64,000 nt of DNA from Diplonema japonicum (Eukaryota > Protista > Euglenozoa: Diplonemea): positions 248,001 through 312,000 of the forward strand of contig OZ025734.1 of the NCBI GenBank assembly GCA_964019335.1. Direction: 5' to 3'. Under the pieces are notes generated by a model. The model saw only the letters and a list, made by a program, of their open reading frames with translations, was not told the origin of the DNA and ran no database searches. The translations under genes and the position numbers were made by a program. This document shows positions 3,939-51,879 of this stretch, piece by piece (the stretch's first letter is position 1; each line of letters begins with the position of its first letter).

Positions 3939-3973
<35 letters not shown>

Positions 3974-4182: not shown

Positions 4183-4217
<35 letters not shown>

Positions 4218-30434: not shown

Positions 30435-31628
30435 TGGTTTTGGTTTTCAGCAACCACGTATCAGAATTTTTACGTAAATCGGTGTTGTTGCTCAGAAGGA
30501 ACCCAACTTTTTCAAAAGAAATATCGATCTCAGCCGGAAGAGGAGAACCTTCATTATTATTTTTATTATTCTTTTTTTTTTTTTTGTTACCAAATATTTA
30601 TCATCCCTCAAAGCAAGACGAAGGATGGGCAGCCTTAGGGAATTGAGGATCGAAAAGTCAAAAAAAAAAATGCAGGTGAAGAAGTTGCGGTTGCCAGCAC
30701 TGCCGAGGTGGATGATAACGAGGGTGACACGAGTAACGATAATACGGCCGGTGCAATAAAAAAAGATTTTATTCTTCTTTTTTTTTTTTTTTTTTTTTTT
30801 CTACGAAGCCAGCATTAAAAAAAAACTTTTTAAAAAAAAAATATGAAAGTAGTTCCAGACGAAGAGAGGTGTCGAAAGAAAAGGGGGATTTGGGGAGGGG
30901 GGGTGGGCCACATATTGTATATTTCTTTAGTGCTTAAGAGTGGTTTCCCCACTCACAGGGTGGTTGTGAAAACGAAACTCATCTTTGAAAGGGGGGAGGG
31001 GGGGTGGCGGCTAAAATTAAAAAAAAAAGCGGGGTTTCCCAATCTATTCTTTATTTCCTCGGACCGCTCTATGCCGTCCACAAGCCATATTGCAGCCCAA
31101 GTTGTGGGGATGGCTGGGGGGGGGGGGGGGGGTACAAACATTTACTTGCTCTTTATCTCCGTTCAGAATTCGGAATAAAAAAAAAAAAGAAAAAAGGAAG
31201 ATGGGAAACAGGGCAGGAAGAAGGCCGCCAAGGGAAAACATCAGGGAGAAGGGGGATAATAATAAAATAAATAAATAAATAAAAACTTTTTTTTTTCCTT
31301 CTTTTTTTTTTGTTGAGGGTCTGTCCTAGCTGAGAGGGAATAAATGAAAAAACGAAGAGAAAGAGAAAAAAAAAAAGAGAAAGAGAAAGAGAAAGAGGGG
31401 GGGGAAACCCCCCCCTCGCACCCCCCCCCCCCCCCCATCTTCCTCCATTGCTTTCTTTCTTTATTTGTTCTTTTCAAAGAAAAAAAAAACAGCAATATTT
31501 TTTTTTCTTCCTGAAATAGAGTATCTGGGTGGGGGGGGGGGGGGTCTATTTTTCCATTTTTTCTTTTCGTTCATTTTGATTCTTTGATTGCATATTTACT
31601 AAGATTTCGCACGACGAGCCCACCCCCC

Positions 31629-34600
31629 TCACCTCGGTGACTCTACTCTGGTTATATGAACATTCTCCAGCGTTTGAATAGAGGCCCTTCTGTCAGCCTG
31701 TCTGGCAATGTTTCCTAGTGAAGAAGAGTGGCGCCTAAGGGAGCCGAGCCCGCTCAGTGACGGGCCTGCCCGTCCAGCACCGCGCGACACGGTGGGGGAG
31801 TCGCCAAAAGGCAGCTGGTTTGTGGAAGCAGACGGATACAGTTTGCTGGCCATCCGCAACTGCGCCTGCGTGCCCATTCTGGGAAGCTCACCCTTCCCGT
31901 CCCCTTGTGATGGTTTCACCAAGACAGTCGCACGCCCTCCCGCACCTGCTCTATTGATGCCTAAGACAAGCGGTTCCCACTGCCCCTTCTGGTCCCTCTT
32001 CACATTTCGCAGCACATCGTTGAACTCAGACTTCGAAGAGATCGCTCTGTTGTTCACCGTCAACAACACATCACCTTTTATTTTTATTTACTTTTTTTTT
32101 TTTTTTTTTTTTTCATACCAACACGCAGCCCAGTCTCCAGTGCAGGTGCTGCGACACCAGCGACCTTCATTCCACTGACCTTGCCGGCCCCAAGTTGAGC
32201 CATGGGTTCCAAAGTGATACCCACGCCAGGTAGTTCGTAGTTCTGAGAGAATCCCTTAGAGTGAACGCCCTCTGTTGTTTCATGCTCGCTGTCGGAGGAC
32301 TCGTTCTGTAAAACAGGAGGTTTCAGTCTTGCAACGGACACCCTTCGCGTGTGCTCGTTCGGCTTCGTGCTTGGCGATCTGTTCATGAATGTGGTCGATG
32401 CCTCCAGGTTGATGCCTGTCGGGGATCTTGCAGGCGAGCGGCCTGGAGAGACAGGCTTGAGGTGTGGAGAGGCAGCCCTGACCTGTAAATGCCCGCCTCT
32501 CCCGCCAAGCAAGGATGCGCCCTTGTACGTGCCCATGTCTCTTTCGTCGCCGCGGCGTGCTTTCATCTGCTCGGACCTTCTGTTGATGTCTGTGACCGCG
32601 CCTAGACGCATTTTGAGCTGGTTCCCCCTCACCTTCATCTTCTGCTTACGCTGTCGCGGCTGGAACAGGTCGTAGATTGTCACGATCACCGGGTTCTGAA
32701 CGGTGGTGAATAACGGCCACTGGTGGTGGTTCTCGATCTCTTCCTGTTTTTATTTTTTTTATTTTTTTTTTTTTTTTAAACCCGTACCATGTCAGTAAAA
32801 TCGCCCTTTCTCTGCATCTGTAGCAGAACCTGTTCTACAGGTCCGCGGAACTTCAAGAAATGCCTCACAGCCGCACGGAATTCTGATATCTGTGTTGGAA
32901 AAAAAGAAATTATGGGGGAGGAAGAAAAAAAAGAAATTAGGTTTCAACACATACACTTCTAAACCCGTCGGAGTCGAAAAAGTGTACAGGCTTCTGGCCA
33001 GGACCGCTTTCTTTGAAGAAGATGTAGGAGGTTTCCACGGGGGCCGGCACGGCAACGGGTTTCACTTCCTCGTCACCTTCGTCACCGGCCTTCAACATGT
33101 CTTGGAAGTCCTCCAGCCCGCCCTTGGAGCTCCATCCCTGCGGCTTTTGCTGTGTGTTTTTTTTTTTTTTTTTTTTTCCCCGTTATTAAATTGTGCTTTT
33201 GATATTTTACCTTCAAGGCGGCGTAGCCCTCAGTGTCACCGTCGGGTGCGAAGCCCTCTACAGCTGGCACGATCCCAACCAGCCACCTGCAAAGGGTTGT
33301 GTTTTTTTATTTATTTTTTTGTTTTTTTCTGCATACGCATCTTCGTCTTCCTCCTTCTGCTGTGCCGTCGCGTCGTCCCATGCTTCGCATGTGAATTCCT
33401 CCTTCCGTTTCGCGTCACTGTTGTTGTTCTGGTAATATGTAAAGATTGCAACATACGCTTTGGGCTTGGGAGGTGGCCACGGCACCCCCAGCGGGTATCC
33501 CAAGGGTGGGTTCATCGGCCAATCCTCGCCCGGCTTTGGTATGATGTCCAACCATTCCTTCGGGGGGTCTTTCCCTCCTAGGGCCACCTTCAGCCACTCT
33601 GCGGGGGGCAGGTCGTTGTTCAAGGCGGACCGAAGCTGCGTCTGAGGGTCGAGGGCGTCGTTGTTGCCTGCGAAGGCGAGGTTGATCCACACAGCCTCCA
33701 GGTCTTCCTCTTCATTCTTGCCCACATCCTCGCCCGGAGCATGTACGGCAAGAGTAGGCCCGTGTCTTGCTCCTACGCTGGGTCCACGCTTCCTCCTTGC
33801 CGGCACAGCCAAGCCCTTCTTCATTGGGGGTGCGCTCGGCTCCGCCTTGTCCTGCAGCGCGACCTTCGGCACTGGCGGCGGCCACGGTGAGTCAACAGGG
33901 TACCCTGCAGGCCTCTGCTCCGGCCATTTTTCCCCGGGCTTCGTCGGCATCAGTTTCAGCCACGCGTCTTCAACTTCGCTCTTGTCGGTGGCAAGCTTCA
34001 GCCACTCCGCAGCGGGCAGATCGCCATGCATGGCAGCTTGCGCCATTTCTGGTGCAGGTGCGTCCAACGCCAGCTTCAGCCACTCAACAGGCACTTCCTG
34101 GTCTACGTCGCCCTCCTTCGCCGACACCGTCACAGTCGCTTTCGGTTGCTGTTTCTTCGCTACACTCGGCCCTCTCGTACGCTTCTTAGGCGGTGCCAGC
34201 TGTGTCTTGGGCGCAGGCTTGATGTACGGTGGTGGCGGCCACGGCAGCTCAGCCGGGTAGCCTAGCGGTTTGTTCGGCGGGAATGTGCCGTCAGGCCTTT
34301 GACACTTCAGCCAGTCGGCAGGCGGATCGGCACCATTCAGTGCAATCTTCAGCCATTCCTGAGGAAGCAACTCGCAGTTCTTCGCCTTGCGCAGTGTTTC
34401 GTCATCAACCCCTTTGCTCACCAGCAACCGGAGCCATTCCACAGCCAGATCGTCGTCCTTTGCCTTTACCTCCTGCTTCGGGGGAGGCCATGGGAGGTTC
34501 GACGGGTAGTCTGCAGGTCTTGGGCGCCACGAGCCATCGGTACGCTGCAGTTGCAGCCATTCAGGAGGCGGCGCCTTGCCGTCCAATCCTATCTTGAGCC

Positions 34601-37600
34601 ACTCTGCTGGGGCAAGTTCGCCTTTCCTCGCCTTGTCCATCTGCTCATCTGCGATACCCTTTTTGCACGCGACGGCAAGCCATTCCACGGCCAAGTCTTC
34701 GTCGGGGTTCTTCGGCTTTGGTGGCGGCCAGGGAGCAGTGGCGGGGTACCCTGCAGGGCGCTGCTCTGGGTAGTTGCCGTCGGGGTTGAGAGTGAGCCAC
34801 TCGAAGGGGAGATGGTGGTCGGGATTGTCGAGGGCTAGCTTTAGCCAGTCACGCGGGCCGAATTCACCTGTAAGCATCCTGCGCAAGCCGTCAGAAGAGA
34901 GTTTGCCTTCCTTTTCGCGGTCGTAGGCGAGTTTGATCCACTCAACGGGTATGTCATTGAAGTTCGACTGTACCCCAACGCTCTTGGGTGGCGGCCATAG
35001 TGCGTCGGCAGGGTATCCCGCGGGCCGTTGTGAGGGGAAGTTTCCATCAGGGCCCAGCTTCAGCCACTCCGGGTCGGGGTCCCTTCCGAGAGCGATCTTG
35101 AGCCACTCGGCAGGTGACAGCTCGCTGTCGAGGCCCCTGCGCAGGTCCTCGTCTGTCATGCCCAACTCCTTTTGCTTGTCGAACATTATCTGCACCCACT
35201 CCACAGGGATCTCATCGTCAATAACACGCGGCGAGTAGTTGTTCGGCATTGGCGGCGGCCACGGCGCTGTCTCTGGGTACCCTGCTGGCCTTTGTTCGGG
35301 GAACTCTCCGTTCTTGTCGAGCGCCAACCAATGCGGCTGCGGATCATCTCCCGTCGCGAGCTTCAGCCATTCTTCAGGAGGCAGCTCACCCTTCAGCACT
35401 TTCATTTTTTGCACGTTTGGAACATCTGGGCGGAAGGCCACCTTCAGCCACTCCACAGGAAGATCGTCTTTCTTCCGTGCAGGTGTTGGCACCCCCTTTG
35501 GAGGGGGCCACGGTAGGTTGATGGGATACCCCTTAGGTCTATTATAGAAAGTACCGTCAGGCTTTGTTCTAAGCCATTCTACGGGTGGGTCTTTGTCGAG
35601 GGCGATCTTGAGCCACTCGGCTGATGTGAGCTCGTCGCGGTTGGCCTTCTGCATGGTGGGCGCGTTGATCTTACGCTCGAAGTACCTCTCGAATGCGATG
35701 TTGAGCCACTCAACAGGAACTGTGGACTTCTTTTCTTTTGCGACCCTAGCCTTCATGGATTTTGCCCTAGTGAGCGGGACTGGCGCCGGTGGCGGCCAAG
35801 GAAGATTCTGGGGGTAGTTCCTGGGACGCAGCTTCTGGTAGTTCCCATCCGAGTCAAGCTTCAGCCATTCCGGGTCCAGCTCTCTACCGTCCAAGCCGAT
35901 CTGAAGCCATTCCGCCGGCTCCAACTCACCGTGCATTGCCTTCTTCTGAATACCCAGTGGCAACGGCTTGGGAGGGTCCATTGCAATCTTCAGCCAATCG
36001 ACAGGAATGTCATCATCAGGGTCATGAGCAGTGGCTTTTGGCTTCGGGGGTGGCCAAGGAACGTTGGCAGGGTAGTTCGAAGGCCGCTCTGCAGGGAATT
36101 CACCATTTAGGTCCAGCTTCAGCCACTCGGGGTCCAGATCGTCACCGAATTGGAGCTTCAGCCACTCTGCAGGCTCGAGCTCTCCTTTAACTGCAAGCTT
36201 CAGCTTCTCTGTCGGCGCGTTTTCGTTTTCGAATGCGAGGCGTAGCCAGTCGGCTTCAAGATCGTCTTCCGCTTGCGGGCGCTTTTTGGTCTTAGCGTTT
36301 GCCTTCGGTTTCGGTGGTGGCCACGGCATGGTGGGTGGGTACAATGCAGGGCGCTCGGCCGGCCAATCTTCGTCGGGCTGTGGGATGATCTTGAGCAGCT
36401 CTGCAGGCGGGTCGCCGTTCATGGCGATACGCAGCCACTCTGCAGGGTCGAGATTCCCGTCCATTGCTGCCTGAAGCATTTCGGGCTCCAGATCCTCATC
36501 CTGGAAAGCTAACCTTAGCCACTCCACAGGCACTGCCTCTTCATCTGGTTTGTACCCCTTCGGTTTGGGCGGTGGCCACGGCGCGTCTTTTGGATACCCC
36601 TTGGGTGCTTCCTTTGGCCAGTCCCCGCCTGGTGGTGGCACTATCGACAACCATTCAGCGGGTGGTGTTCCATTCTTTGCTGCGATCTTCAGCCATTCAG
36701 CGGGTGTCATGTCCCCAAGCGCGATCTTTTTGATGTCATCGGGAGACGCGTTGTTCTTGAAGGCGACGTTCAGCCACTCGACAGGAAGGTCTACATGCGG
36801 TACTTTGTCGGGTGCGGGGGGCGGCCATTGCAGGTGCGCAGGCCAGTTCTCAGGGGGTGTCGGACCCCACGTCTTGCCATCTTTTGGTATGATGTTGAGC
36901 CATTCCTCAGGGATGTCGTCGCCACCTGCAGCGATTCTCAGCCACTCTGCCGGCGGCATCGCTTCGCCCATTTTCAGATTTTTAAGCTGATCGCGGAACT
37001 TTTCGTCATTCGCCATAAGCTTCAACCACTCTGCGGGTAGGTCTTCATTGGGGCCTTTCTTCGTCTGCGGAGGTGGCCACGGCATGTCCTTCGGCCAATT
37101 AATTGGTGGCTGCTCGGGCCACAACCCCCCCGGGGGAGGGGCTATGTTGAGCCACTCAGCTGGAGGTGTTTTGTTTTTATTTGCAATCTTCAGCCATTCA
37201 ACAGGTGTCATGTTCCCAAGCGCGATCTTTTTGATGTCCTCGGGAGGCGCGTTGTTCTTGAAGGCGACGTTCAGCCACTCGACAGGAAGGTCTTTCGGTA
37301 CCTTGTCAGGTGCAGGGGGCGGCCACTGCAAGTGCGCAGGCCAGTTCGGAGGTGCTGTTGGGCCCCAAGTGCCCCCATCTTTCGGTAAAATATTGAGCCA
37401 CTCTGCAGGGATATCACCACCGCCTGCTGCAATCTTCAACCACTCAGCGGGTGGCAGTCCATCAAGCTTCATGTTCTTCATTGCGTCAGCGAACTTCTTG
37501 TCCTTGACCATAATCTTGAGCCACTCGGCGGGGAGGTCTTCCTTGGGACCTTTCTTAGGTGCAGGTGGTGGCCACGGAGCGTTCTTCGGCCAGTTGATCG

Positions 37601-40600
37601 GCGGCTCTTCAGGCCACAAGCCCCCTGGAGGTGGCACGATGCCTAACCATTCCGCAGGAATCTCGTCCTTGTCAAGGGCAATTTTAAGCCATTCTGCAGC
37701 CGGGAGCTGGTTCTTGATTGCGAGTTTGATGTAATCCGGGTTGAGGTCGTCGCCTGCGAGAAGAAGTTTCAGCCATTCCGCGTCGAGGTCGGGTTCCTTC
37801 GTGTGCCCGATCCTTGGAGGGGGCCATGGAAGTTTCTTGGGCCAGCCGATGGGAGGTTCTTCAGGCCAGAGCTCGTTGTCGGGGGGAACGACATTGAGCC
37901 ACTCTGCAGGGAGGTCGCCTTCGCCGTGTGCGATCTTGAGCCATTCAGCAGGAGGGAGCTGGCCGTTCAGTGCAAGTCGAACCCAGTCAGCGGGTTTCCC
38001 GTTGGGGAAGCCGAGGTTGAGCCATTCAGCAGGCCATTGCTCGGGGTCGAGCATGTCAGGAAGGGGCCCGAAGTTGGGCATTGCCATCGTTTCGTAGTCG
38101 GGCGGTGAGAGCAACATGTCGTTTACGTCGTCGCCGTTGGGCATATAAATTTGTGTTCCCTTCTCTTCGCCCCACATGTGCGTGCCGAGCCCGCGGCCGC
38201 CATCTTCAGTTTGCATGATCATGTCGAAGTGGATCCTTCCCTTCTTGGCCTCCTGCTCCTCGTTCTTCGATCTCGACGCGATGTACGTTGTCTGTGTGGC
38301 GTTCTTCCTGGCAAAGTACTTCCCTACGTTCCAGATCAGCCACAATATAAGGTCGATGAGCGCTCTGATCAGCAGCAGAATCAAGCAGAAGAAATACTGG
38401 AACAGTACAATGATCATAGCAAGACTCCTCCTGCAGAAGATGTAGTACGCGAAGGCGAACAAGTACTGTTCTCTGCGGTCCTTCAGAAGCATCAGCAAGC
38501 TCTTCTCACGCTGGTGGTCGATCTTGGGGGAGTTGAAACAATCCCTGCCGAGGAGGTAAGGCCCGAAGCATGCCCAGAACGAGAACTTCATGCCGAGGAC
38601 AAGGTGTACGAACCAGTACACCATGAAGATGGTGGGGAAGAAGGTGGCGGAGTTACCGAGCATCTCAACAACTCTGATGAACATGACAAGGTACACCACA
38701 ACCCTGGTCAGGATCACAACCGGGACAACGTCAGTGAGGCAGAGGATGTAGTCCCATGTGAAGAGGAATAGTAAGAAGAGAACCTCCCACATGATGTCCT
38801 GCCACAAGGAGAAGAACACAAACAACCAGATGGCCATGTTCAAGATGGAGAAACAGAACCTTCCCATACTGCTGGTGCCCCTGTACTCAAGAATGATCGA
38901 CACCTTGTAGTGATGCAGCAGGGACTCTGTCTTGTCTCTTTCCAAGTTGTGCGTTGAATCGTAGAACTCCACTTCACGGACAGCACGCGAGCGGCGCAGC
39001 GCATAGGCGAACTGAATGTACGCCTCAGCTTGCGCGTCACGTGAGTTGTATTGGGTGTTCCGCCTCCCTCTGAAATCTCCGTCCTGCTTCGCAATCTGGT
39101 CAAGCTTCTCGCTGGGCAGATAGTCCATCGCATGCTTCAGCCCGTAGCTTTCCAGCTGCGCAGACTTCCCTTCCACCATGAAGTAGATCAACACAAACTC
39201 TTCATACGTCGCCTGGTTAATGCTCAACGCGTTCATGTACTCCTCAATCTCAGAGATGTCCACACGAATACCCCTCGACAAAAGCCCCATGAATATCAAG
39301 TCTGGGCCGATTAGGCCCCTCATGCCGCCTCTGATATCCAGCTTTCTGAACACCTCTTTTAGGGTCTGCATAAGGTGCGACGACACGCCCCTGTTCAGGA
39401 AGTGGTCTTCATTGAGCTCGCTGTCGCTTAGAAGGTCGTCTTCCTGCTTCTTCATTCTTGCCGTGGGCACGCTGCGAGATGTTTGCTTGTCTTCGATGTT
39501 GTGCAGTTCGGCGAAGTTGGCGCCAGCACGGGCGGTTTTGGGGGCGCTGCCACCGGGGCTGCCCTCGACGTGCTCGTACTCGACGAAGGTCGGCTCCGTT
39601 GATGGCTTCCAAAGACCTTCCTGGCGTTCGACTGTCACCTTCTGAGGTGCCAGAGGGGCATCGGTCTCATTTACCTTGGGGAACACGACGTTGTAGTCCT
39701 CTTGGTCACTGTCGTACTCGTCGTCATCGTCACCGGGAAGCGTGATGCGGTTCGACTGCAACGGGACATGCGGCTCTGTGTCGCTGTCGGTGATCTTCGT
39801 GCTCTCCACGCTAGAGGAATCGTCCGTAAGAGCCTGCCGCCCCGTCACAGCACCCGACGTTGTCGTCGGCTTGCTGGAGTGCGGGTGGCCTATCTTGGGC
39901 GACCCTGCCGTGTTCGGCCCCTGAATATCCCTGTTCTTCTTCACCATAGCGTTGAACAGTTCTGCCATCCTCTTCTTCTCCACACCCTTGCCGCCCGGGG
40001 AGTTCTCCTTCCCTCCAGGCGACATCGGAAGGATCGGGTCCTTCTTGCTCTTGATCTGCTGGATCGCGTCGCCCCACACCCATGAAAAGAAGCGGAGCAG
40101 ATCCTTCGTGATGCCCGCTACAGAAAGCGAAGGGTTGAACATGCAAGGGGTCACCATCCACCCGATAGCTACACCCCAGTGGAAGAAAGTGCGGAGGAAA
40201 GACTGCCCCGAAGGGCGAGGGTGAAGGTCCATGTAGAGGACGATGATGGCGAGTAAGAGACTTCCGTACATAAAGTGCGTGTGCGAGTAGAGCCTCCACA
40301 TGTGGCGGAAAGACCTACGGAACAGAGGGTCCATTCTACCGGTGGCAACATAGAGCCCAGCACCATTGAAGACGGAGCTCCAGAAGTAGTGGTACTTAGT
40401 GAGGGTGACGAACAGGAAGAAGGATGTGACACCAGTGAAGTCAATGAGCCACTGGAACAGACCCCATACACCGTAGTCGAGGATGAGCTGTACACCAAGA
40501 GGAGCGCCTTCGAGAAGCGTCATCTGGACCATCCACTCGCTTCCGTAAGGCGAGCCATCGCGCTGGAGTTCGTAGTCGGTCTTCCCCGCCAGAGTCAGCG

Positions 40601-43600
40601 CGATCTGCAAGATGATGGTCGAGAAGATCTGAATAAAGATCAATCCCAAGTAAACGTAGACCCCGATAGAGCCGAAGAAGATGGAATGGCGCTCGAACAC
40701 GTTGGAGTACCTGGTCAGCTCGAAGAAGTCCCTCGATCGGTACTGCATCGCAGCGCCCATCCCGAGCTTTGCCTCGAAGCCCATGGCACCGTCGAAGTTG
40801 GTCTCTCTACCCTTTCCTGACTTCACGTCCTCAAGGTGGATGGTGCTTTCGCCAGACGCCTTGATATGGTACCCGGCAAAGATATCTTCGTTCAAGTTCA
40901 CACGCGGGTTGGGTTTTGACAGCCCGCTCTGCGTCACTACCCATGAGCTGTCGAAGTAGTCGGGATGCCCGTAGTGCATGCGCACACCTAGAACAGACAG
41001 CACACGCTGGAAGAGGGTGTTAAAGATATACTCAGCGTATCCCGCGTACCTCCCCACTGTTCCTGATTTCATTGTGATCACGTACTCAGGATGTCCCACC
41101 ACCTTGTACGGGCACCATTTCCTGTTCTCCTTCGGGAAGAACTTCCCGAGCAACGTTCTCAGCTTCAAGGACTCTTCGAAGTAGCCGTCTTGGTTGCAGT
41201 CGACTGTTTGGATGACCTGTCCTTTGCAGAACGGAAGGCAGTGTGCTTGGTTAACGGACTTGCCCTGCATAGGTCCTGGGAGGGACCATTTCACCTTGTC
41301 CTGTTTCGACATGCGGAGGGGGAGGCGCCTGCCTATAACTTGGTTGACAAACCAGTCCTCTGTAGCGACGTCCCAGAGGGCAAGGCATGAAGCGTATTCC
41401 ATACAGTCCCAAAGGTCTTGCATGACGAAGGTGGTTTTTTGGTAGACCTCGGGGCTCATGCGGTAGTCGCCGGTTTCCACGTCGAAGACGACTTGCATTT
41501 TGGGGAATCGGCGCCAAGTGGTGCTGAGGGCACGCTTGTTGGCGTCGTACCACTTGTTGTTCGCCATGCGCTGCAGGGCGATGATGACCTGCAATTTGTC
41601 TGACGACATCATTTCAACGTATGTTGCAGTGATGATGGAGCTCTGCGTGTACTCAGCCTCGAGCTCCAACAAGAAGCGAACGGCCTCCCTGTTGCGCTCG
41701 ATACCACGCACTGTCCTTGCGACCGTTTGCATCCTCATGGACGCCCACCACCAAATCGCATCGAACTCCTCTTCCGAGAACAGCTTTGGCCTTGTGTGAA
41801 ACAGCTCGCAGACCCGCATTCCGCATATCTCACGCAGCCTGTTGTCCGGTTTCAGCGCCCTCTTTTTAATGTAGTCGAACTCTTCTACCAGTGTTTGTTT
41901 GTCTTGCAGGTATGCCACAACCTGCTCTTCCAGCAGCGCTTCACGGAACAGCTGGTAGTCGGTCACGCATCGCTCCACAAAGTTCAACCATTCGTCGTGG
42001 TAGTGTTCCACTAGGAAGTGCAGCTGGCTCTGTTGCTGGTGGTCTCCGCGTGCTTTCAATCGCAGCAAACGCCTGTCGGCGAGGATCCCTTCCCCGTACA
42101 CCGGGACGATGACAGACGCTGACGGGTAACACTGAACAGGACCGAGCGACTCTTCGAAATGCGTGCTCGACTGCAGATACTCTAAAAACCCAGATAACCT
42201 CTCCTTGGCGAATGAATTGTCTATCTTAAACGTGATATCTGCAACATGGGGGTGGATCAGAAGCGTCTCGTACTCGTACGACGTCAGGATGTCCTCCTCG
42301 TGCATAACTTGTATCACTTTGTTCCAAACCTTGCGTGCCAGGTTGTTGTCCCTGGGGTCGGTGAACGAAAGAAGCTTGACGTTGATCGCAGAGAGGATGA
42401 ACTTCGTCTCCATTTTATGCCCGTGGATCTGACGGGACTTCCTTGACTTCCATTGGATCAGCAAATGCTTGATACCGCCGAGTAGGATAACACCTATGAG
42501 GAAACCACCTTGCACGGAGATCGCGAACATCCCACCTGTAGAGAACCAGATCATGAAGACGGCCACGAAGCAACGGGGTTGTTCCTCGCCGCACTTCCCG
42601 ATCTTTGAGGAGAGCTCGTAGAAGAAGTCGGACGCACCTTCGTCTTCAATCCCTGTCTTCAGCCCGTCGCAGTCGCAGAAGGAGAAGCCTGTCCCTTCAG
42701 TCCTATACATGATCCAAGCTTGAAATACAGCTGCTACACAGTAAATCAACGTCCAGAAGATGATGGAAATGCCAAGCGCCCATGTATTGACGGTACTGGT
42801 GGAAGCAGGAGCACCGTGCAGCTTGTGGGGGAATACCGTGATGTAGATATTGAAGGCGAACAAGCTGCTCAGGCGTATCACCAGGTACATGAAAATCCTG
42901 CGGTTAGAACCCGCGTCCTCATAGCCTACAATGTCGCCCAGCACAAAGATAACAAGGAAGGTGATCATCGTTACGTAGCCACTGAAGCGGAGCTTGAAAA
43001 ACGACCAAAACCTGACCCTTCTGCATGTGGTGTCTGTCCAAAAGGTCTGACAGGTCACCTCCCGGGTGTCGGCCTGCTGTTTAGCCTTCACCTTGCTGCA
43101 GCAACACCTGCACTTGCAGAACATAAACCCGATCGCGCCGAACAACCTGGTGCATATCACAGAGATGAACGGGAACTGCGTTAAGCCAGAGGAAAGCCAT
43201 GCGTCGAGAAGTTCATGCGTCACCACCAACCAGAAGTCCATTTTAACCATCACCAGTAAGATGAAGTGCATCTGGCTTGAACTCCTCCACACATCATACG
43301 ATCTCTCCATAACAGCTTGCAGGTCACGGTTTTTGTCGGTCGAGAAGAAGACGACCAATGCCCAGAAGACGAACAGCATCGCAGTGGTGTGGATGACGAA
43401 GAACGCGTCGTGCAGCATCAGGAAGATGACACCCCATTTCCGAGGCTCTCGGAAGGTTTTTCTAAACGGGAAGCGCTTCGTTTCGCTGGTGTCGGGGTTT
43501 CCGTCGGGAAGCAGCAGCTTGGGCATCTGTCGCTGCCCCCGCTCCTCCAACGCAATGGAGCAAACCTCAGGACATTTCCTTGAGCAAATGTGTGGGATAT

Positions 43601-46600
43601 CGTAGTACGGCATCAATGCGCATGACTCGTTGATATCGTCAAAGGTCAACGGTGTCTCCATGAAATGCCTCCCGTCGTTCAAAACGTGGGTAGGGGGGAA
43701 CCTTTTGAACTTTAGGAAGTAGTGCAGATTCCAAGACAGCCAGTGTCCCGAGAACAGCGTAAGATGCTCGCCAAGCTGCCAGATTGTGAACAACCCCAAC
43801 AGTTCCGTCAGCTGTTCGTCGGTCCTCTTTTCCTGGCCTTCTTCTGCAACGTCAAGGATACCCCCGATTGTTTTCTGCGCGTTGCACCACCCGTGGAACG
43901 AGTGGAGGTATCGATAATGCAGGGTTGACACTGCCCACTCGAATGCTGCGTCAGTCTCTTGATGTTTTGCCTCTGTCCCCCACCGTCCTTGGCACAACAT
44001 TTCGTCGTAGATTAACATCTGAAGACGTTCCAGTTGCATCCTAACACACTGCCATCGGTTGTAACACCACGGGTCGACTTCGGGTTGCGGGGTGAGCTCG
44101 AAGGCTCCGGTGTACATTCCGTCGCTCGCCACCTTGCACCCGGTTTGAAACCCAGGGACAGCCTCTTCACCACCGAAGATGACTTCTGTTAACATGGTTT
44201 TACCTTCATCATCAGGAGCAGACTTCCATTTCTCCCACACGCCTACAAATTCAAGGTCCTCTTCGTCTTCATCGTCGTCAAGCTGCATGTTTCGCGCCAC
44301 AAAGTCAATGAGGTACCTGGATGTCAAAAGAGATTCCCCGTTTTCCTTCAAAGTCGGGAAGGACACTTCTTCGAATTTCCTCGCCGTCCCCGTTAGCTTG
44401 TACTTCCCTCCGGTGTCCTGTCCCGTGATGTTGAACCCGGTGTTGTTCGGCAGTGCGGAGAACTGAAGGAAGAGGCCGAGCTCTCTTGCTTCTTGGTCAA
44501 ACCACGTCACTTCGCCCTCCCATTCACCTGAGAGGGGTGCGATTTCCCTGTCTGCAGCCAACCCCGGTTCCGACTGGATCGCAATGCGTTCAAATGGTTT
44601 TTGTGTATGCGGCAGCGTGCAGGTTCTCTTGACGATGATACGGGACAGCTTGCCAATGTCAGGTTGGAGCCAACGTGTCCCTGCCTGCGCGCCTCTTGTC
44701 TCAGCTCGCACCTTCACGTTGCGCCGGTGCAGCATGGCCGCACAGCAGAAAACCGTCCCAAGAAACAAACAGATGACGGTAGTGAAAAAGATGGCCTTCT
44801 GCCACTGGTCCTCGAGGAAGAGGAAAAGACAGCTTTCAAACACGTCCGGGTTGTCGACACCAGTGAGGATGGATGCGAGGGTGAAGTACTCCTTCTTCGG
44901 CCCAATGCAGTGCTTGAACCATGTCTCCCGCTGGTAGTTAATCCCAATGTGTTCCAGGTTAAGTTCCCCGTCGATGAACTCAATGACACGAATACTACAA
45001 GTAGAGTGCCGCCCTGGACTGGGATCGGGGCAATCATTATCGTTGTGAGACGTGGCACCACGCCAGTACTGGTCGACCCATTCGGAGATTTCAAGACCGC
45101 ACATGTCATGTGTTCTATAGTAGTCAAGGAGGAGGTTTGTTTGGTTAGATAGGAGCGACGCCCGATACGGCTGGTCCTGCCTGATTTTAATACTGTTGAA
45201 CGAGTCTGTCTGCAGCCTCACGAACAACGGGTGGGTGATCCCACCTAAAATCTGCGTCATGCTGGTCACGTTCACTTCCAGCAGCGTAAGCTCAACCAGC
45301 TCCACGCCGTCCTTGTAAATATCGACGGGTGCCGTCCCACCAGTGATAAGCTGTGTCATTCCGAACTCCGGTAGGGAAAGCACTATGGGGCGCTTTCGCT
45401 CGTCTTTCTTGTCACGTATTCTACGAAGCTGCCTGAAGAGCGTGAGGTAGTTATACGCCGAGTCGATGGTGATGGACCCGAAGGAGTTCGACTCCAGGTT
45501 CCACAAGATAACGTTTTCGTACTTTCCAAGGATGTCCATGCAGTCGAAGAGCTTCTGTTCTGCGATGTGCCTGTTGTTCAGAACCTGGTCCTGTGTCGCA
45601 GTGAAGGTGATCATCACGTCAAGGTTCTGCTTTGCGGCGTACGACACGAAGTGCTGCAACCCGTAGAGATTTAACCCGAACCACGTTACCTTCAGTGTGT
45701 TGAAACCCATGTCCCTTATCCTAGGAAGGTCCCTGTCGAAGAGCGGGTCGTAGAACTCCCCGTACACGTTTGTCTCGGATGGTTTTCTCGCCACCACGGC
45801 CGGTACGTACTCCATGACCTTAAGCTGGTAGTTGAAGGAGTCCTTGTACCAGATCTGCCTTCCCACGGTTCTTAAGGGTATCGATCCTGTCCACGATGGG
45901 AACACGACGCAGTTTCCCAAGGTATTTGTGAGGAGCCCCCACTCTACAGCGGAGGTCATCGGGTTCAGTATCGTGAAGTTCATCGGGAGTTTTGCATCTA
46001 GGAGCTCCAAAGCCTTCGACCCGTTGTGCAAAGCCAGAAGCGACACGTCAAAGGAGTTGCTCGCAAGGCTTCGAAGGTTATTCGGGTCCGTTTCCAAGAG
46101 AGTCATCACGTTTTGAATCCCGGCTGCGATGTCTCCTAGCGAGCTGCGCATCCCGACAAGATGCTCGCCCAAAGGAGAGAACACTGACAGCGTGTCGGCG
46201 GCTTCAACGGAAACCGCTGTCTTTCCCACCACACCACTACCGAACACCCCAACGTGCGCTTGGAAAGGATTGTTTTGAGCCGAGGACAGCCAATGGTTCA
46301 CAGCGGAGTCAGTTTCCATGGTCAACAAGATGGTTGCAAGCGACGATGCGTTTGCGATTCCCAGTATGTCGGCGGTTTTTTTAGCCCCCAACCATGCAAG
46401 GAGGGAGTAGGAGGGCGCGGAGTAAGCACGGCCTTCTTCTCTGCTGACAATGCCGCCCGAGAAGGACGATGCTGTGTACCAGTCGAAGTTTCGGATGGGC
46501 GTGTAGTAGTTACTCTCGCCAGACATCATGATAGTCCGCAGCAGCGCGTTGATGAAAACAAAGAAGGAGTCAGGGATAGCCGGCGCTGTCTCTAGACCCC

Positions 46601-48062
46601 CAGGCGGCACGCCGTACAGTTCTGCAAACCCGTACAGCACCATGCCGTAGACAGCCGTGTTGTTTTCATAGTTGTCGGACACCACTTCTGACGCAAGCCT
46701 TCCAGGTTGCGACACGACCACTCCCTTCCACGTCTCGTCGTAGACAGTCAGTTGCACGATGGTAGCCATCAACTCGAACATCCTTGTCTGCAGACGCAGT
46801 CCCATCTTCACTGCTTTAAGCCGCCTCGCAATGCGGTACAGTACAGCCAACCCGTAGAACTCTTCAGCCTTCACGGGCAGCGTCTCCTCGTAACCAGAAG
46901 CGTTATTCGAGGCGGCCTTTACATCGCCTAACAGGTACTCGTCGTCGAGCAGCGCCATCGAGTGCAGCCAGAACTCTTCACAGGTGTCTTCGAAGGCTGC
47001 AGCGTCGGTGCTTAGTAGTTGTTTCGAGACGGGGAACTCCATCTCGAAGTTTGCGGTCTCGACGACAGGAGGCATAAGCACGCCCATGACAGTCATGTAC
47101 TGCAAGGGGTTGGCCGTTTCGTCGTTCCAACCAGCAGGCCACCCGCCCTTCCACTTCGATCGGTGATTCGCCGCTGTCAGGATCAAAGGCATGCATGAGG
47201 TGCCCGGCGCTGTGTTCCACGTGATGTTCGCGCTTACAGTGTCCCCTGTCGCGTTATAACTGGCGCCCATGGTGCCGCCGTACGGCACGCACTCGCTGTG
47301 CTCGATGAGGTACCGCGACGCCTCGCCGTGGGAGGGCCCTTCGGGCACATTCGCTATTTTTATCCATCCCACAACAGGGTCGAGCAGCCTGATGACAGTG
47401 GTGCTGACTTCCATGCGGGTCACCTCCGGCAGGATGACAAGCCAGCGCTTACCTGAGGAGGTGGTGACGTTGAGGATGCTGGCGTGGACCTCGAAGGTGG
47501 TGCTGACCGGGAGTTTAGAGATGCGGGTGATCTCGCCGGTGAAGGTGAGGGAGGCGAGGGCATTGTTCACAGTGCGGAAGGCGAGAAAGGGAGACCCGCG
47601 GGTGAGAACAGACTCGAGCCCAGCATCGGTTTGGGGCCCGTTGATGATGGTGTGCAGGGAGCGGACGTGGAAATCCCCCCATTCCACGACCCTTGTCTGG
47701 CATCGTTCTGCAGTTGCGTCAATGTTCACGTCCAGTTTGATGTCCTGCGTGAACTCAGTCGCGACACGCCGCCCCACGTTCGTAGTCGTCGTCACTGGAG
47801 CCGATAGCAAGAACCCGCACGGATTCTGCTTCACCAGCAAGGGCAGTGCGTTCACCGGCGCAGAGTTTCCCGTCGGGTCCACCAGGTCAGCCCACCACTG
47901 CCCCGTTGGCAGCGGTACCGTAGCGTCCGAGGGCTCCAACATACTAGTATTCCATGTGCTATTCACAGCAATAAACGGCACAGGTGGCACCGCATCCAAA
48001 TACACAGGCACGTCAGTTTGCGATACGACCACTGCAACCAGCAGCCCTACCACGCCATGCAT
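31629..48062 (-). CDS. Giant 1,3-beta-glucan synthase (GT48) fused to degenerate GH81 and GH-like domains, 17 Trp/Pro repeats and PDZ; about 5,389 aa, 6 exons
   Basis: GT48 motifs DEWLNFVER, WASMRMQTVARTVRG, GKSVNQ, DCNQDGYFEE, RMHYGHPD, LNEDIFAG, GKGRE. Frame-preserving GT-AG introns at 33287-33336, 33150-33210, 32890-32954, 32744-32787 and 32075-32118 give 16,170 coding nt. Confidence 0.9.
33465..38050 (-). repeat. 17 tandem ~85-aa protein repeats (PxEWL...PAEWLKIA...EWL...PxxYP...WPPP)
   Basis: 17 WPPP-terminated units counted in the translation. Confidence 0.92.
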
Positions 48063-49011: not shown

Positions 49012-51879
49012 TCATATAAGCCCCACATGCTTCATCCCGTCAGACTCAAAGTAGGCGTCACCCCTAGGTGGAGGGGAGCCTGCGTGTGAGGGCGACAGCA
49101 AGGTGCCGATGGCGGTAGTGTCGGAGCCGATCGCAACGTATTCATCGCCCAAGATGTCCTTAAGTCGGTCCCAATAGGGGCCCGGGCTTGAAACGACGGA
49201 GGGCCCTCTTCGGGGGCTGGTGTGGCGCATCTCGAAGGCTTCTTGAGGGGCCCGACGGGCTTCTTGCGGTTGGCGGTATGGAGTCTCCATTGTGCCTTCG
49301 ATGGCAGCAAGCTGGTGTTTAAGGCCTTCTATGTGCTGTGCCTTACGGGTGGGGAGAGGTGCACCGTTGGGTGGAAATGAGGAAGTGGAGACGGCACGGG
49401 GAATAGACGCGGGGTGTTGATGCTGAACGGATCGAGGGACGCTGGGAAGGTGCTGGTTCGGTATAGGAGAGGCAGACTGGTGCACAACGGGCGACTGCTG
49501 GTACGACGCGCCAAAAGGATACCCCATTCCAGGCGGTATGGGCACGGGTGAGGGCGACGCCGCATGCATAGGCACGTGTTGTGTGCGTGCTGGTATGTGC
49601 GACAGTTTATTGATCATATCAGCCATGGGCTCCGCAGACACGGGCAGCGTTGATGTGACAGGCGGGAGTGCTGGCCTTGGTGCCTTCTGCAGCTCCATCA
49701 TCTTGTCGTACTGCTGCTTGATGATGTCCAGGTGCTCGTGCTGCACATCTTCCGTTTCCTGTCTGCTCTTTATGTCGTCGAGCTGCTGTTGTGCCACTTT
49801 CTGTTGCGCCCTCCCATCGTTCAAGGCGCTCATATGATGCCCGTGTGCTTTTTTCAGTTCGTCCATGTACTCTTCATGCCGCCTCTTCTGATCAAACATC
49901 ACCGAGTGTTGATTGGTCTGCAGTCGTTCCAAGTAGTCCGATAATGCGTTTACTTGCATGTACTGCAGCTCGTTAGCCCCCGAACCGCCAGGCATCTCGA
50001 AGGCTTGAGCGCGTGTCCGTGTGGGCGACGTGAAGCTGCTTGTGTTTGCATGAGAGTTGTGGCTGATCTTTTCCTTCAGGTTCGCAAGGGTCTCCAGTTC
50101 CTGCTGCAACGTTGCCATCTCTTTCGTCAGCTTTGTGACCGCTACGTTTGTCCTTGCCCGCTCAGCATCTTGAAGTAACATCTTTGTGCGTAGTTCTTCG
50201 TCTTGCAACACTCGTATCTGCATCGGTGTTATGCTGGGCTGTGGCATAGGCGGTGCGGGTGCCAAATGGGGCTCTGGGTTGAACGGTAATCCTGATTGTT
50301 CAGGCACTGGGATCTGCCGAGTTCTAGGAGGCGACACCTTGGGGTACACGGATTGCGGTTGTTGTGGCTGTGGAGGCTGAGCGTGCTGCATTACAGGCGT
50401 CACCTGCTGCGAGGTGGGCGGGGGCCGCAGCTGCTCAGACGGCGGAGCTACAGGTGGGGGTTCCGGAATATCAGGAACTGCAGAAGGCACATGCGAAGGA
50501 GGGTTGGTAGGTACCTCAGCAGGCGCGGTGGCTGTGGTGGAAGGCGCCGACGGCGGTGCAGTAGACAAGGGTCGCATGTAAGGCTGCTCGTCGAGAAGCG
50601 GCTGGGGATGACGGGGAGGCGAGATCTGGCGGGAGGGTTGCTGAGTGTCCCAAGGGGCTTGCTCGCGCGACTCCAGCATGAGTGAAGGGTCAGTGGGGTA
50701 CTTGGCCCATCCGTTGAATTTGCTGCGGAAATCGAAGACATGGACTGAGAGGAGGTCATGGCACACGGCGAGGCGTCCGTTGTGCACCGTGTGCAGGAGC
50801 CGTTTGCTAGGCCAGTACGGGATGCAGAACTCAACCTTCTCCCATCGCCCTGTGGCGATGTCCCAGATCCAGGAATCGTTTACATTGATGGCCCGCCCAG
50901 AGGCATCGAACGTCATGCCGCCAAACACCATCATCTCTGCGCTGGACACCACAGCGACATGCAGGGCGCGCGGCGCAGGCGAAGGCAGAGAGGTGTTGGG
51001 TGTTGATGTGCGCCATTGGAACGATTGCAAGTCAAGGATATAGACCATGTTGGAGAGCGTGGCACTGGGCGGAGCGTCCTGAGGTGTGGTCACGACCCCG
51101 TTTTGCTCCTCTTCGCTGACGTCGAACCCGCCAAAAACAAGCATGTAGTCGTTGAAAGTGACAGCGGAGTGTCCCCACAGGTAAGGCTGGCTTCCTTCGT
51201 ACCTCTCTACCTTTGTCCAAGTCCGTGATGGAATGTCTAAAATATGCAGGGAGAAGAAACCTTGCGCCCTTGCTTGGTGAAGGTCGGCCGCTGTCAGGGC
51301 ATGGTCATGGCCCTTGGATAGGTCCTGCCCGCCGTACACCAGCATCTTCCCGTTGTGGACCACAGCAGTGTGATGCGACCTTGGTCCCGGGCTTTCACCG
51401 AATGTCTGCACCCTCATCCATTCGCACGTCTCTAGGTCCAGCTCGTAGTACGGTGTCTCTTCCACGCCCACACCGTAAGAGGGGTCTGCTATGCCACCGT
51501 ACACCAACTGTGGTTGTGGTGGGTTTCTCCCGTTATCGCGAATGTCATACCATCTGGTTTCCATACGTCACGGAGCTGTGGTATGTGCGTGGTGCAGGGA
51601 TGTGCCCTGTGCATTGTATCTGCGTCCATTTCAGCAAGCCCAGATGAAGGGCCCAGACCTTATCCGGGACAGGGCCCCCATAAGTGAACATCGTATCCTA
51701 GGTGGGGGTGTTCAAAGAAATTCTTTTTAGAAGAACAAGAAGAAAAAAAAAAAAGAAAAAAAGAAGAAAAAAAAACATACCCCATCCAACACAGAAGTCA
51801 CGCCGTCGCTCTTCGCTGTGAACCCGCAGGCGTCTGTACCGTTCCCCAGCCGGACCATGGAGTCGAAGAGGCGTGTCAT
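49012..51879 (-). CDS. Kelch-repeat protein with Pro/Gln-rich and coiled-coil C-terminus (about 913 aa, 3 exons)
   Basis: PxPRxxH...YGG/FGG...W repeats; introns 51698-51780 and 51508-51550 extend the ORF in frame to ATG 51879. Confidence 0.88.

What the first reader, a model, noticed from the sequence alone, without database searches (positions are those of the whole stretch)
31629..48062. About 5,400-aa multi-domain beta-1,3-glucan synthase
Seen: signal peptide, GH81-like domain, second GH barrel, transmembrane helix, GT48 core with intact ED motif, EF-hand-like loop (about 39180-39365), 17 novel repeats and PDZ in one polypeptide. Established: fungal and plant GT48 enzymes are about 1,900 aa, and Euglena paramylon synthases carry an N-terminal glycoside-hydrolase-like region. 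Inference: one chain that polymerises glucan, binds it on the luminal side and is anchored by a large cytosolic scaffold. This is a candidate machine for storage-glucan granule formation.
Basis: partly seen in the sequence, partly recalled or inferred. Interest (0 to 1): 0.85.

Follow-up and report, generated by a model that had tools for sequence, protein, structure and literature searches.

The report
Giant diplonemid beta-1,3-glucan synthase
This is a real, expressed 5,376-residue gene of a marine diplonemid protist that joins a working-looking beta-1,3-glucan synthase to two sugar-enzyme-like domains on the far side of the membrane and to a very long, previously undescribed repeat tail ending in a PDZ domain; the gene is conserved across diplonemids but its architecture has not been discussed in any paper I could search.

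Summary
One 4,934-codon open frame (33258-48062, minus strand) continues through six tiny GT-AG introns to a stop ending at 31629.

A public spliced contig of 4,943 nt lacks all six introns. It links the repeat array to the PDZ exons on one mRNA.

Confirmed parts:
- GT48 core with all tested Fks1 catalytic residues but one
- GH81-like domain, which lacks the family's two catalytic Glu
- a second clan GH-A TIM barrel, shown by an AlphaFold model and Foldseek
- 17 repeats of about 83 aa ending in WPPP
- PDZ, shown through collinear orthologues

Weak or inferred parts are the EF-hand-like loop, the signal peptide and the cytosolic side of the tail.

Full-length orthologues of 5,505-5,525 aa exist in Diplonema papillatum and Flectonema neradi. 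Partial ones exist in Rhynchopus and Sulcionema. A hemistasiid has a 6,125-6,360 aa version with a different repeat tail.

D. papillatum DIPPA_33377 is already listed as 'GT48' in a CAZyme table, and Euglena GSL2 is known to carry an N-terminal GH domain. So this is a new variant of a known kind. The new part is the tail. Its repeat has no Pfam match, no PDB fold match and no strong relatives outside diplonemids.

A role in storage-granule formation is plausible but untested. Earlier first-reader notes in this scan flagged three other GH-GT48 genes in this genome.

The parts
31629..48062 (-). Whole coding region: 7 exons, 16,131 nt, 5,376 aa
33457..48062 (-). Exon 1 (14,606 nt, intronless): signal peptide through repeat 17
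47997..48062 (-). N-terminal hydrophobic signal-peptide-like segment (aa 1-22). Orthologues start the same way.
   Evidence: judged by hydropathy, no dedicated predictor
46143..47945 (-). GH81-like domain (aa ~40-640). Both Glu of the family's QESxSE motif are replaced (S and Y here) and are not conserved in any orthologue.
   Evidence: Pfam PF17652 E 1e-11; PDB GH81 chains; motif table
44805..45890 (-). Clan GH-A type (beta/alpha)8 barrel plus Cys-rich end (aa 725-1086). The Glu at the end of beta7 ('SEW') is invariant in 13 relatives. The Glu at the end of beta4 ('LES') is present here and in most orthologues.
44727..44801 (-). Single transmembrane helix after the luminal modules (aa 1088-1112). 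Flank charges are -4 on the N side and +4 on the C side.
43434..44726 (-). Cytosolic juxtamembrane region (aa 1113-1543), no family match. aa 1164-1332 is absent from paralogue C86.
42450..43433 (-). First transmembrane cluster (aa 1544-1871, about 8 hydrophobic segments)
40071..42218 (-). GT48 glucan-synthase core (aa 1949-2664). Residues: K2268, D2288/N2290, H2366, N2391-E2392-D2393, K2417, R2419, F2429, K2432, Y2571, R2576.
38883..40070 (-). About 400-aa low-complexity insert after the TM10 equivalent. It contains the EF-hand-like pair (39180-39365).
38319..38870 (-). Last transmembrane cluster (aa 3065-3248). It ends in a 48-aa hydrophobic block with positive flanks on both sides.
33468..38069 (-). 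17 tandem Trp/Pro repeats of about 83 aa. Each has three 'P-x-E-W-L' helices followed by 'P..YP...PWPPP'. RxRxxS motifs sit in the linkers of units 16 and 17.
33418..33456 (-). Intron 1 (39 nt, GT..AG)
33287..33336 (-). Intron 2 (50 nt). It removes the apparent stop of the long ORF.
33150..33210 (-). Intron 3 (61 nt)
32890..32954 (-). Intron 4 (65 nt)
32744..32787 (-). Intron 5 (44 nt)
32075..32118 (-). Intron 6 (44 nt), inside the PDZ domain
32600..33149 (-). Conserved module of unknown fold (exon 4, exon 5 and the start of exon 6). It is kept in D. papillatum, Flectonema and the hemistasiid Namystynia.
31911..32227 (-). PDZ domain (HtrA/DegP-like type), split over exons 6 and 7
   Evidence: Precomputed PF17820 and PF13180 in P0001 and P0003; orthologue profile hits DegP, DegS and S2P PDZ chains, E 4e-4 to 6e-3; collinear BLAST of exons 6 and 7

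Best explanation
This is the Diplonema japonicum orthologue of D. papillatum DIPPA_33377, a diplonemid-specific giant isoform of the euglenozoan GSL-type (GT48) beta-1,3-glucan synthase. The proposed working is as follows. The N-terminal signal sequence puts about 1,060 residues on the luminal or extracellular face: a catalytically degenerate GH81-like domain and a clan GH-A barrel. One helix then crosses the membrane. The multi-pass GT48 body uses cytosolic UDP-glucose to polymerise beta-1,3-glucan and threads it through its own channel to that same far face. There the tethered GH-like modules can hold, order or remodel the emerging chain. After the last membrane cluster comes a tail of about 2,100 residues: 17 small helical Trp/Pro units, a conserved module of about 110 aa, and a PDZ domain. 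The tail most likely lies in the cytosol as a long scaffold or tether that positions, clusters or regulates the synthase, with conserved RxRxxS sites. Shown here: the gene structure, the single mRNA at the 3' end, the domain identities, conservation of the catalytic residues, and conservation of the architecture across diplonemids. Inferred: enzyme activity, the sidedness of the tail, the binding role of the GH modules, and any link to paramylon-type storage granules.
For: Gene and mRNA. Spliced contig X8 removes six introns and joins the repeats to the PDZ exons, and related organism X1 shows the same joints. 31 of the 39 listed X1 differences fall on third codon positions of the inferred frame. 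Exons 2-7 are collinear with P0001 aa 4917-5484. A complete 5,505-aa Trinity ORF exists in Flectonema neradi.

Enzyme. Pfam GT48 E 6e-82. The alignment to ScFks1 conserves K1082, D1102/N1104, H1195, N1220-E1221-D1222, K1246, R1248, F1258, K1261, Y1424 and R1429. PMC13249079 shows these residues to bind UDP or Glc, or to be needed for growth.

Luminal modules. GH81 hits. Barrel model and Foldseek hits to GH-A families, including the beta-1,3-glucan-active GH72, GH157 and GH158. TM1 flanks are -4/+4. Sequon density is 1.13 per 100 aa in the N-terminal part against 0-0.37 in the GT domain and tail. In Euglena, residues in the N-terminal GH domain of GSL2 are needed for paramylon synthesis (PMC10884871).

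Tail. There are 17 units here and 17, about 18 and 20 in three orthologues; a fourth orthologue sequence, which ends inside the array, shows 16. The AF2 model of two units has mean pLDDT 82.7. Both flanks of the last hydrophobic block are positive, the tail has almost no Cys, and RxRxxS motifs are conserved in three species.

Context. D. papillatum stores a beta-1,3-glucan (PMC10161547 and PMC8611851, citing Skodova-Sverakova 2020).
Against: No activity, localisation or product is known for this protein or for any orthologue. Four GT48 loci exist in this genome, so another paralogue may be the storage synthase. The D. papillatum orthologue is expressed only near the median (TPM 1.67) and no peptides were detected. 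Fks1 N1257, which is needed for growth in yeast, is Gly here. The tail's side of the membrane is inferred, not shown; ScFks1 has 17 TM helices and I could not transfer its topology. The 5' two-thirds of the mRNA were not covered by my one reads call, and the 5' end (spliced-leader site) was not seen.
Confidence: 0.72

Rival explanations
1. Same enzyme, different product site. It works at the plasma membrane and makes an extracellular beta-glucan (surface coat, cyst or sessile-stage material, or feeding-related matrix). Another, shorter GH81-GT48 paralogue is then the storage synthase.
For: GT48 enzymes of fungi, plants and oomycetes act at the plasma membrane (PMC12715860; hits P0029-P0035). 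Four GT48 loci exist in the genome. The signal peptide and sequon-rich ectodomain fit either a surface or a luminal location. The D. papillatum orthologue has a modest transcript level.
Against: No paper I searched describes a glucan wall or coat in diplonemids. Stored beta-1,3-glucan has been demonstrated in D. papillatum. The Euglena GH-GT48 homologue GSL2 makes storage paramylon.
Confidence: 0.2
2. The Trp/Pro repeat tail is luminal or extracellular and acts as a second, multivalent glucan-binding array. The many Trp would act as sugar-stacking platforms, so both ends of the protein would grip the product.
For: There are four invariant Trp per unit. HtrA-type PDZ domains also occur in non-cytosolic compartments (the PDB hits are periplasmic DegP and DegS). 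If the final 48-aa hydrophobic block is one helix and not a hairpin, the tail would be outside.
Against: Both flanks of that block are net positive. The tail is sequon-poor (0.37 per 100 aa) and nearly Cys-free. RxRxxS motifs with a conserved Ser are present in three species. In the AF2 model the Trp sit in short helices of a compact unit, consistent with core positions. The hemistasiid tail replaces most EWL motifs by ELL.
Confidence: 0.15
3. Gene-model artefact: two or more neighbouring genes (synthase, repeat protein, PDZ protein) read as one.
For: The long ORF has a stop at 33258, and the PDZ lies 1.2 kb downstream in other frames.
Against: A single spliced contig bridges the repeats and all downstream exons. 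The frame is kept through all six junctions. The independent D. papillatum annotation and a complete Flectonema transcript ORF have the same order. The repeats lie in the same 14.6-kb open frame as the GT48 core.
Confidence: 0.02

Closest known systems
Euglena gracilis glucan synthase-like 2 (EgGSL2, paramylon synthase; Tanaka et al. 2017, as cited in PMC10884871)
   Same: A euglenozoan GT48 enzyme with a predicted N-terminal glycoside-hydrolase domain in the same polypeptide. That domain is functionally required (C121/W122). The product is a stored beta-1,3-glucan.
   Different: I could not retrieve the Euglena sequence, so orthology is untested. No long C-terminal repeat tail or PDZ is reported for it. 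The protein here is roughly twice the size expected for GSL-type enzymes.
Saccharomyces cerevisiae Fks1/Gsc2 (GT48; PDB 7XE4, 7YUY, 9PE1)
   Same: The GT48 core aligns at E 4e-35. The DxN and NED motifs, the KxR pair, the IF2 Lys and the latch-loop Tyr/Arg are conserved. It is a processive synthase-translocase.
   Different: Fks1 has 1,876 aa and a cytosolic N-terminal accessory domain (PF14288, not detected here). It has no signal peptide or GH modules, no 400-aa insert after TM10 and no tail. N1257 is Gly here.
D. papillatum DIPPA_33377 (listed as 'GT48, b-1,3-glucan synthase', 5,525 aa, in Additional file 4 of Valach et al. 2023, PMC10161547; 'hypothetical protein' at NCBI)
   Same: Orthologue: 58% identity over 99% of the query, 17 repeats, the same C-terminal module and a PDZ.
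   Different: It appears only as a row in a table. The GH81, barrel, repeats and PDZ are not annotated or discussed there.
GH72 Gas/Gel beta-1,3-glucanosyltransferases and GH157/GH158 laminarinases (clan GH-A)
   Same: The second luminal domain has the same (beta/alpha)8 fold, with Glu at the ends of beta4 and beta7. A Cys-rich segment follows the barrel, as in Gas proteins.
   Different: TM-scores are about 0.5 and identity about 15%. No family can be singled out: GH2, GH5 and GH10 score alike. The usual Asn-Glu pair at beta4 is Leu-Glu.
Oomycete giant GT48 fusions (Plasmopara and relatives, 7,221-7,298 aa, HECT/SPRY/RanBP2 + GT48; P0013, P0026)
   Same: They show that GT48 synthases can be fused to very large cytosolic regulatory or scaffold regions.
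   Different: The added domains are unrelated. Only the GT48 core is similar (26% identity over 11% of the query).

Membership tests
GT48 beta-1,3-glucan synthase (CAZy GT48 / Pfam PF02364) | Significant match to the family model over the catalytic core | tested here: met
   PF02364 E 6e-82, 276.7 bits against a cut-off of 37.2, aa 1949-2664; Fks1/Gsc2 PDB chains at E 4e-35
GT48 beta-1,3-glucan synthase (CAZy GT48 / Pfam PF02364) | Catalytic and donor-binding residues of ScFks1 (K1082, DAN D1102/N1104, H1195, NED 1220-1222, K1246, R1248, N1257/F1258, K1261, Y1424, R1429) | tested here: met
   All are conserved except N1257, which is Gly2428
GT48 beta-1,3-glucan synthase (CAZy GT48 / Pfam PF02364) | Multi-pass membrane body flanking a cytosolic GT domain | tested here: met
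   Hydrophobic clusters at aa 1544-1871, 2459-2650 and 3065-3248 lie around the GT core. The exact helix count was not determined.
GT48 beta-1,3-glucan synthase (CAZy GT48 / Pfam PF02364) | UDP-glucose-dependent synthesis of beta-1,3-glucan | not testable with these tools
   Needs an enzyme assay or genetics
GH81 endo-beta-1,3-glucanase | Match to GH81 family models | tested here: met
   PF17652 E 1e-11. The orthologue profile hits GH81 structures at E 3e-6. PF03639 is precomputed in several relatives.
GH81 endo-beta-1,3-glucanase | Two catalytic Glu in the conserved QESxSE segment. The identity of these residues is from my own knowledge of GH81 structures and was not verified in a paper here. 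| tested here: not met
   The aligned positions are Ser and Tyr here, and they vary (S/E/V/I/D/T and Y/D/W/N) in the eight relatives that carry the motif, seven orthologues and the hemistasiid homologue. It is GH81-like in fold but is not filed as an active GH81.
Clan GH-A (beta/alpha)8 glycoside hydrolase/transglycosylase | TIM-barrel fold | tested here: met
   AF2 pTM 0.71 with eight beta-alpha alternations. At least 500 Foldseek hits at E <= 1e-3, all GH-A families among the rows listed.
Clan GH-A (beta/alpha)8 glycoside hydrolase/transglycosylase | Acid/base Glu at the end of beta4 (the usual Asn-Glu) and nucleophile Glu at the end of beta7 | tested here: inconclusive
   The beta7 Glu is invariant in 13 relatives. 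The beta4 Glu is present here and in 6 of 7 orthologues, is preceded by Leu and not Asn, and is absent in the other paralogue clade. Model pLDDT is only 65.
PDZ domain | Match to PDZ family models | tested here: inconclusive
   The window's own halves (exons 6 and 7) give no Pfam or PDB hit when searched separately. Orthologues P0001 and P0003 carry PF17820 and PF13180, and their profile hits DegP, DegS and S2P PDZ chains at positions aligned to the exon 6/7 junction.
EF-hand | Helix-loop-helix with the canonical 12-residue Ca-binding loop (D-x-[DNS]-x-[DNS]-G-...-E) | tested here: not met
   No Pfam hit at E <= 1. The best PDB hit is calcyphosin at E 0.27. The loop reads D-I-R-G-G-M-R-G-L-I-G-P-D and lacks the ligand positions. 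No EF-hand family is precomputed in any orthologue.

The most novel reading that the evidence does not exclude
The 17 Trp/Pro units are a new small protein fold: helices carrying Glu-Trp-Leu, wrapped by a Pro-rich strand. They are strung into a cytosolic rod tens of nanometres long. Together with the conserved module and the terminal PDZ, this rod spaces or clusters GT48 synthases on the granule membrane, so that many glucan chains emerge side by side and crystallise into paramylon-type fibrils. On the luminal side, the dead GH81 and the GH-A barrel act as a chain-holding or transglycosylating cradle. That would make this a self-contained granule-building machine specific to diplonemids.
Probability: 0.15. 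Interest if true: 0.8.

Novelty: new variant of a known kind. Interest (0 to 1): 0.58.

Why it matters
How euglenozoans build membrane-bound, highly crystalline beta-1,3-glucan granules is poorly understood beyond the identification of EgGSL2. Diplonemids are among the most abundant marine heterotrophic protists. D. papillatum stores beta-1,3-glucan and can be genetically manipulated.

This conserved synthase carries its own luminal GH-like modules and a cytosolic tail of about 2,100 residues with a terminal PDZ. That gives concrete, separable handles for testing how synthesis, chain handling and placement are coupled: tail deletion, PDZ deletion, and point mutants in the barrel Glu residues.

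The repeat is also a candidate new fold. It has a confident model and no match in the PDB.

Tried and rejected
- Pfam on exons 4-7 separately gave no hits. PDB phmmer on the exon-7 half of the PDZ gave none either. The PDZ spans intron 6, so this was expected.
- phmmer of the barrel against the PDB gave nothing. It was resolved by structure prediction.
- The first three-unit repeat alignment (A2) was out of register, because overlapping windows aligned to their identical parts. I discarded it and used eight non-overlapping two-unit windows (A4).
- ESM Atlas on two repeat units gave no usable hit.
So I have no genomic context or reference-sliced repeats from the ENA orthologues.
- Two searches aimed at euglenid GSL proteins found only diplonemids plus plant and oomycete GT48 (window aa 1-2700; paralogue C86 N-terminus). 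Orthology to EgGSL2 therefore remains untested.
- I tried to transfer membrane topology from ScFks1. The literature gives 17 helices, but the parity could not be mapped onto this protein.
- The GH81 paper I opened did not state the catalytic residues. That point rests on my own knowledge.
- The Protist 2020 paramylon paper is not held.
- I rejected the reading of the weak bacterial 'PxEWL' repeat hits (P0015-P0018) as homologues of the 83-aa unit. They share only the short motif and lack the WPPP part.


Full report
**What is in the sequence**

The minus strand carries an uninterrupted open frame of 4,934 codons from the ATG at 48062 to a TAG at 33258. The frame upstream of the ATG is closed by a stop nine codons earlier. 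Orthologues begin with the same kind of short hydrophobic N-terminus.

Earlier notes of this scan identify the genome as a diplonemid, Diplonema japonicum. My homology results fit that identification.

**Gene model and transcript evidence**

I laid four public runs on 31101-37100. Run X8 holds one contig of 4,943 nt that lies on 36776->31531 in seven pieces. Six short genomic segments are missing from it:

| Intron | Coordinates | Length |
|---|---|---|
| 1 | 33456-33418 | 39 nt |
| 2 | 33336-33287 | 50 nt |
| 3 | 33210-33150 | 61 nt |
| 4 | 32954-32890 | 65 nt |
| 5 | 32787-32744 | 44 nt |
| 6 | 32118-32075 | 44 nt |

Two of the joints are reported directly with CT..AC ends, which is GT..AG on the coding strand. 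I derived the other four from the piece coordinates and the sequence. All six begin GT and end AG, and five of the six are A-rich (60-80% A in four).

Contigs of X3 and X7 keep the 33295-33362 segment, so they are DNA-type. X1 comes from a close relative at roughly 96% identity and shows the same spliced form.

Intron 2 removes the apparent stop of the long ORF. With these junctions each exon is open in the frame it inherits. The CDS is 16,131 nt, or 5,376 aa, and the stop ends at 31629.

Of the 39 listed differences between X1 and the window in exons 4-7, 31 lie on third codon positions of that frame. This points to purifying selection on the reading frame.

Exons 2-7 align collinearly to aa 4917-5484 of the D. 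papillatum protein. The exon junctions fall at adjacent residues of that protein.

It fails for the 3' 4.9 kb. For the whole length it is contradicted by the single 14.6-kb exon and by a complete 5,505-aa transcript ORF in Flectonema neradi.

My one reads call did not cover the 5' 11 kb, and I did not see a spliced-leader site.

Spliced parts were searched exon by exon.

**Domains, N to C**

1. aa 1-22 is a hydrophobic, signal-like segment.

2. aa ~40-640 is GH81-like.
   - Pfam Glyco_hydro81C scores E 1e-11.
   - GH81 crystal structures are hit weakly by the single sequence and at E 3e-6 by an orthologue profile.
   - In the segment that aligns with the family's QESxSE motif, the two Glu positions are Ser and Tyr here. 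They vary freely in the relatives that carry the motif.
   - By the canonical mechanism this domain is not a hydrolase. The identity of the catalytic pair is from my own knowledge of GH81.

3. aa 725-1086 has no sequence-level match.
   - An AlphaFold2 model built with 12 relatives (pTM 0.71, pLDDT 65) is an eight-fold beta/alpha barrel.
   - Foldseek matches clan GH-A enzymes at E about 6e-8. These include GH2, GH72 ScGas2 and Gel4, GH157, GH158, GH5 and GH10.
   - The Glu at the end of beta7 ('SEW'/'TEW') is invariant in all 13 sequences.
   - A Glu at the end of beta4 ('LES') is present here and in most orthologues, but not in the second paralogue clade.
   - So this barrel is not obviously dead. 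Transglycosylase or binding roles both remain open.

4. aa 1088-1112 is a single helix with flank charges of -4 and +4.

5. aa 1113-1543 is a conserved cytosolic region with no family match.

6. The GT48 body follows. Pfam gives E 6e-82 and ScFks1 aligns at E 4e-35.
   - I mapped the residues that PMC13249079 shows to contact UDP or Glc, or to be required for growth.
   - K1082, D1102, N1104, H1195, N1220-E1221-D1222, K1246, R1248, F1258, K1261, Y1424 and R1429 are all conserved.
   - They correspond to K2268, D2288, N2290, H2366, NED 2391-2393, K2417, R2419, F2429, K2432, Y2571 and R2576.
   - N1257 is Gly.

7. A 400-aa low-complexity insert follows the TM10 equivalent. That stretch has no Pfam hit, the best PDB hit is calcyphosin at E 0.27, and the loop lacks the Ca ligands.

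8. A last membrane cluster spans aa 3065-3248.

9. Seventeen repeats span aa 3332-4865.

10. A conserved module of about 110 aa lies across exons 4-6.

11. A PDZ domain lies across exons 6 and 7, followed by a Ser-rich end.

**The repeats**

Each unit is about 83 aa long (80-135 where linkers are inserted) and ends in WPPP. Ten columns are invariant across the 17 copies. They include four Trp and the final WPPP.

- **Age of the copies.** Copies are 33-53% identical to the first unit, so they are old. The exception is a block duplication in which units 3-4 match units 5-6 at 75-79%. That duplication also explains the 'goes back 420' joint seen in all runs.
- **Conservation between species.** The end units are one-to-one orthologous with D. 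papillatum, while the middle has turned over. Total numbers stay at 17 to 20 in the orthologues with complete arrays; one orthologue sequence that ends inside the array shows 16.
- **Model.** An AlphaFold2 model of two units, built from only eight sequences, has mean pLDDT 82.7. Each unit has four short helices and a non-helical Pro-rich stretch that is also predicted with confidence.
- **No known fold.** Foldseek finds nothing better than E 4.7, and an exhaustive VIA-align search gives a best Z of 3.2.
- **Few relatives.** A profile search of 1.84 billion representatives gives only 12 hits. The strong hits are diplonemid orthologues. The weak hits are bacterial proteins with 15-17-aa 'PxEWL' tandem repeats, which share only the short motif.
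- **Own genome.** In the part of the genome that is held, the repeat occurs only in this gene.

**Distribution**

| Protein | Species or source | Length | Notes |
|---|---|---|---|
| P0001 (DIPPA_33377) | D. papillatum | 5,525 aa | 58% identity, 99% coverage |
| P0003 | Flectonema neradi | 5,505 aa | complete ORF, PDZ |
| P0002, P0004 | two ENA assemblies | - | truncated at the first intron, like the raw ORF here |
| P0005, P0006 | Rhynchopus | partial | - |
| P0007, P0014 | Sulcionema | partial | - |
| P0008, P0024 | Namystynia karyoxenos (hemistasiid) | 6,125 and 6,360 aa | tail of different 'LPxELL' helical repeats; same post-repeat module |

A long helical repeat tail followed by the conserved module therefore looks ancestral to Diplonemea.

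The window's genome holds three other GT48 loci, on C86, C83 and C17. C86 shares the GH modules and the core but not the tail.

**What is already known**

- EgGSL2 is the Euglena paramylon synthase. It has a predicted N-terminal GH domain in which C121/W122 are needed for function (PMC10884871).
- D. papillatum stores a beta-1,3-glucan (PMC10161547, PMC8611851).
- DIPPA_33377 is listed as 'GT48, b-1,3-glucan synthase, 5,525 aa, TPM 1.67, no peptides' in Additional file 4 of Valach et al. 2023. At NCBI it is a hypothetical protein.
- No searchable paper contains both 'Diplonema' and 'glucan synthase' in a relevant context.

So the gene is catalogued and the GH-GT48 principle is known. The tail, the PDZ, the barrel and the dead GH81 are undescribed.

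**How it most likely works**

The GT48 body should polymerise UDP-glucose and export the chain to the non-cytosolic face. Placement of the signal peptide, the charge asymmetry at TM1 and the sequon density put the GH-like modules on that face. That makes them natural chain-binding or remodelling partners.

I place the tail in the cytosol with a probability of about 0.75, for these reasons:
- Both flanks of the final 48-aa hydrophobic block are positive, which suggests a hairpin.
- The tail is nearly Cys-free and poor in sequons.
- RxRxxS motifs keep their Ser in three species.

A luminal, glucan-binding tail remains a live rival.

Whether this paralogue serves storage granules or a surface glucan cannot be decided here.

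**Limits**

- No Euglena GSL sequence could be retrieved.
- The signal peptide and the TM topology rest on simple hydropathy and charge counts.

Noticed in passing
window 31629-33456: All six introns of this 16-kb gene are tiny (39-65 nt), GT-AG and mostly A-rich. They are crowded into the last 1.8 kb, while the first 14.6 kb is one exon. Gene callers on two ENA diplonemid assemblies (P0002, P0004) appear to stop at the first of them.
   Followed up: partly
window 36681-37100 (repeat units 3-6): A two-unit block of the array is duplicated at 75-79% protein identity. All four public runs show an assembly joint ('goes back 420') here, so short-read assemblies of this array are ambiguous.
   Followed up: partly
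P0013, P0026-P0028 (Plasmopara and related oomycetes): Oomycetes encode 7,221-7,298-aa proteins that fuse HECT, SPRY and RanBP2-finger domains with a GT48 glucan synthase. This is another, unrelated giant GT48 fusion.
   Followed up: no
P0015-P0018 (bacterial or metagenomic proteins): These proteins have long arrays of 15-17-aa 'T-I-P-x-E-W-L' repeats next to Laminin_G_3, DUF4082 or FGE-sulfatase domains. The short repeat is not covered by any Pfam family in my scan.
   Followed up: no
G000:C86:163208-173170, C83:50361-59132, C17:404815-411686 (L001-L006): Three further GT48 loci exist in the same genome. C86 has a 3,321-aa open frame with a signal peptide, GH modules and the core, but no repeat tail. 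It is probably the counterpart of D. papillatum DIPPA_09258 ('GH81-GT48').
   Followed up: partly
window 1-64000: Nearly all long ORFs in the window lie on the minus strand (for example 49012-51564, 52044-53168, 29031-30098). This fits euglenozoan same-strand gene clusters.
   Followed up: no
P0008/P0024 aa ~3600-5400 (Namystynia karyoxenos): The hemistasiid homologue has an array of about 95-100-aa helical repeats ('LDAVML..DLDP..I.L') in place of the WPPP units, followed by the same conserved module.
   Followed up: partly
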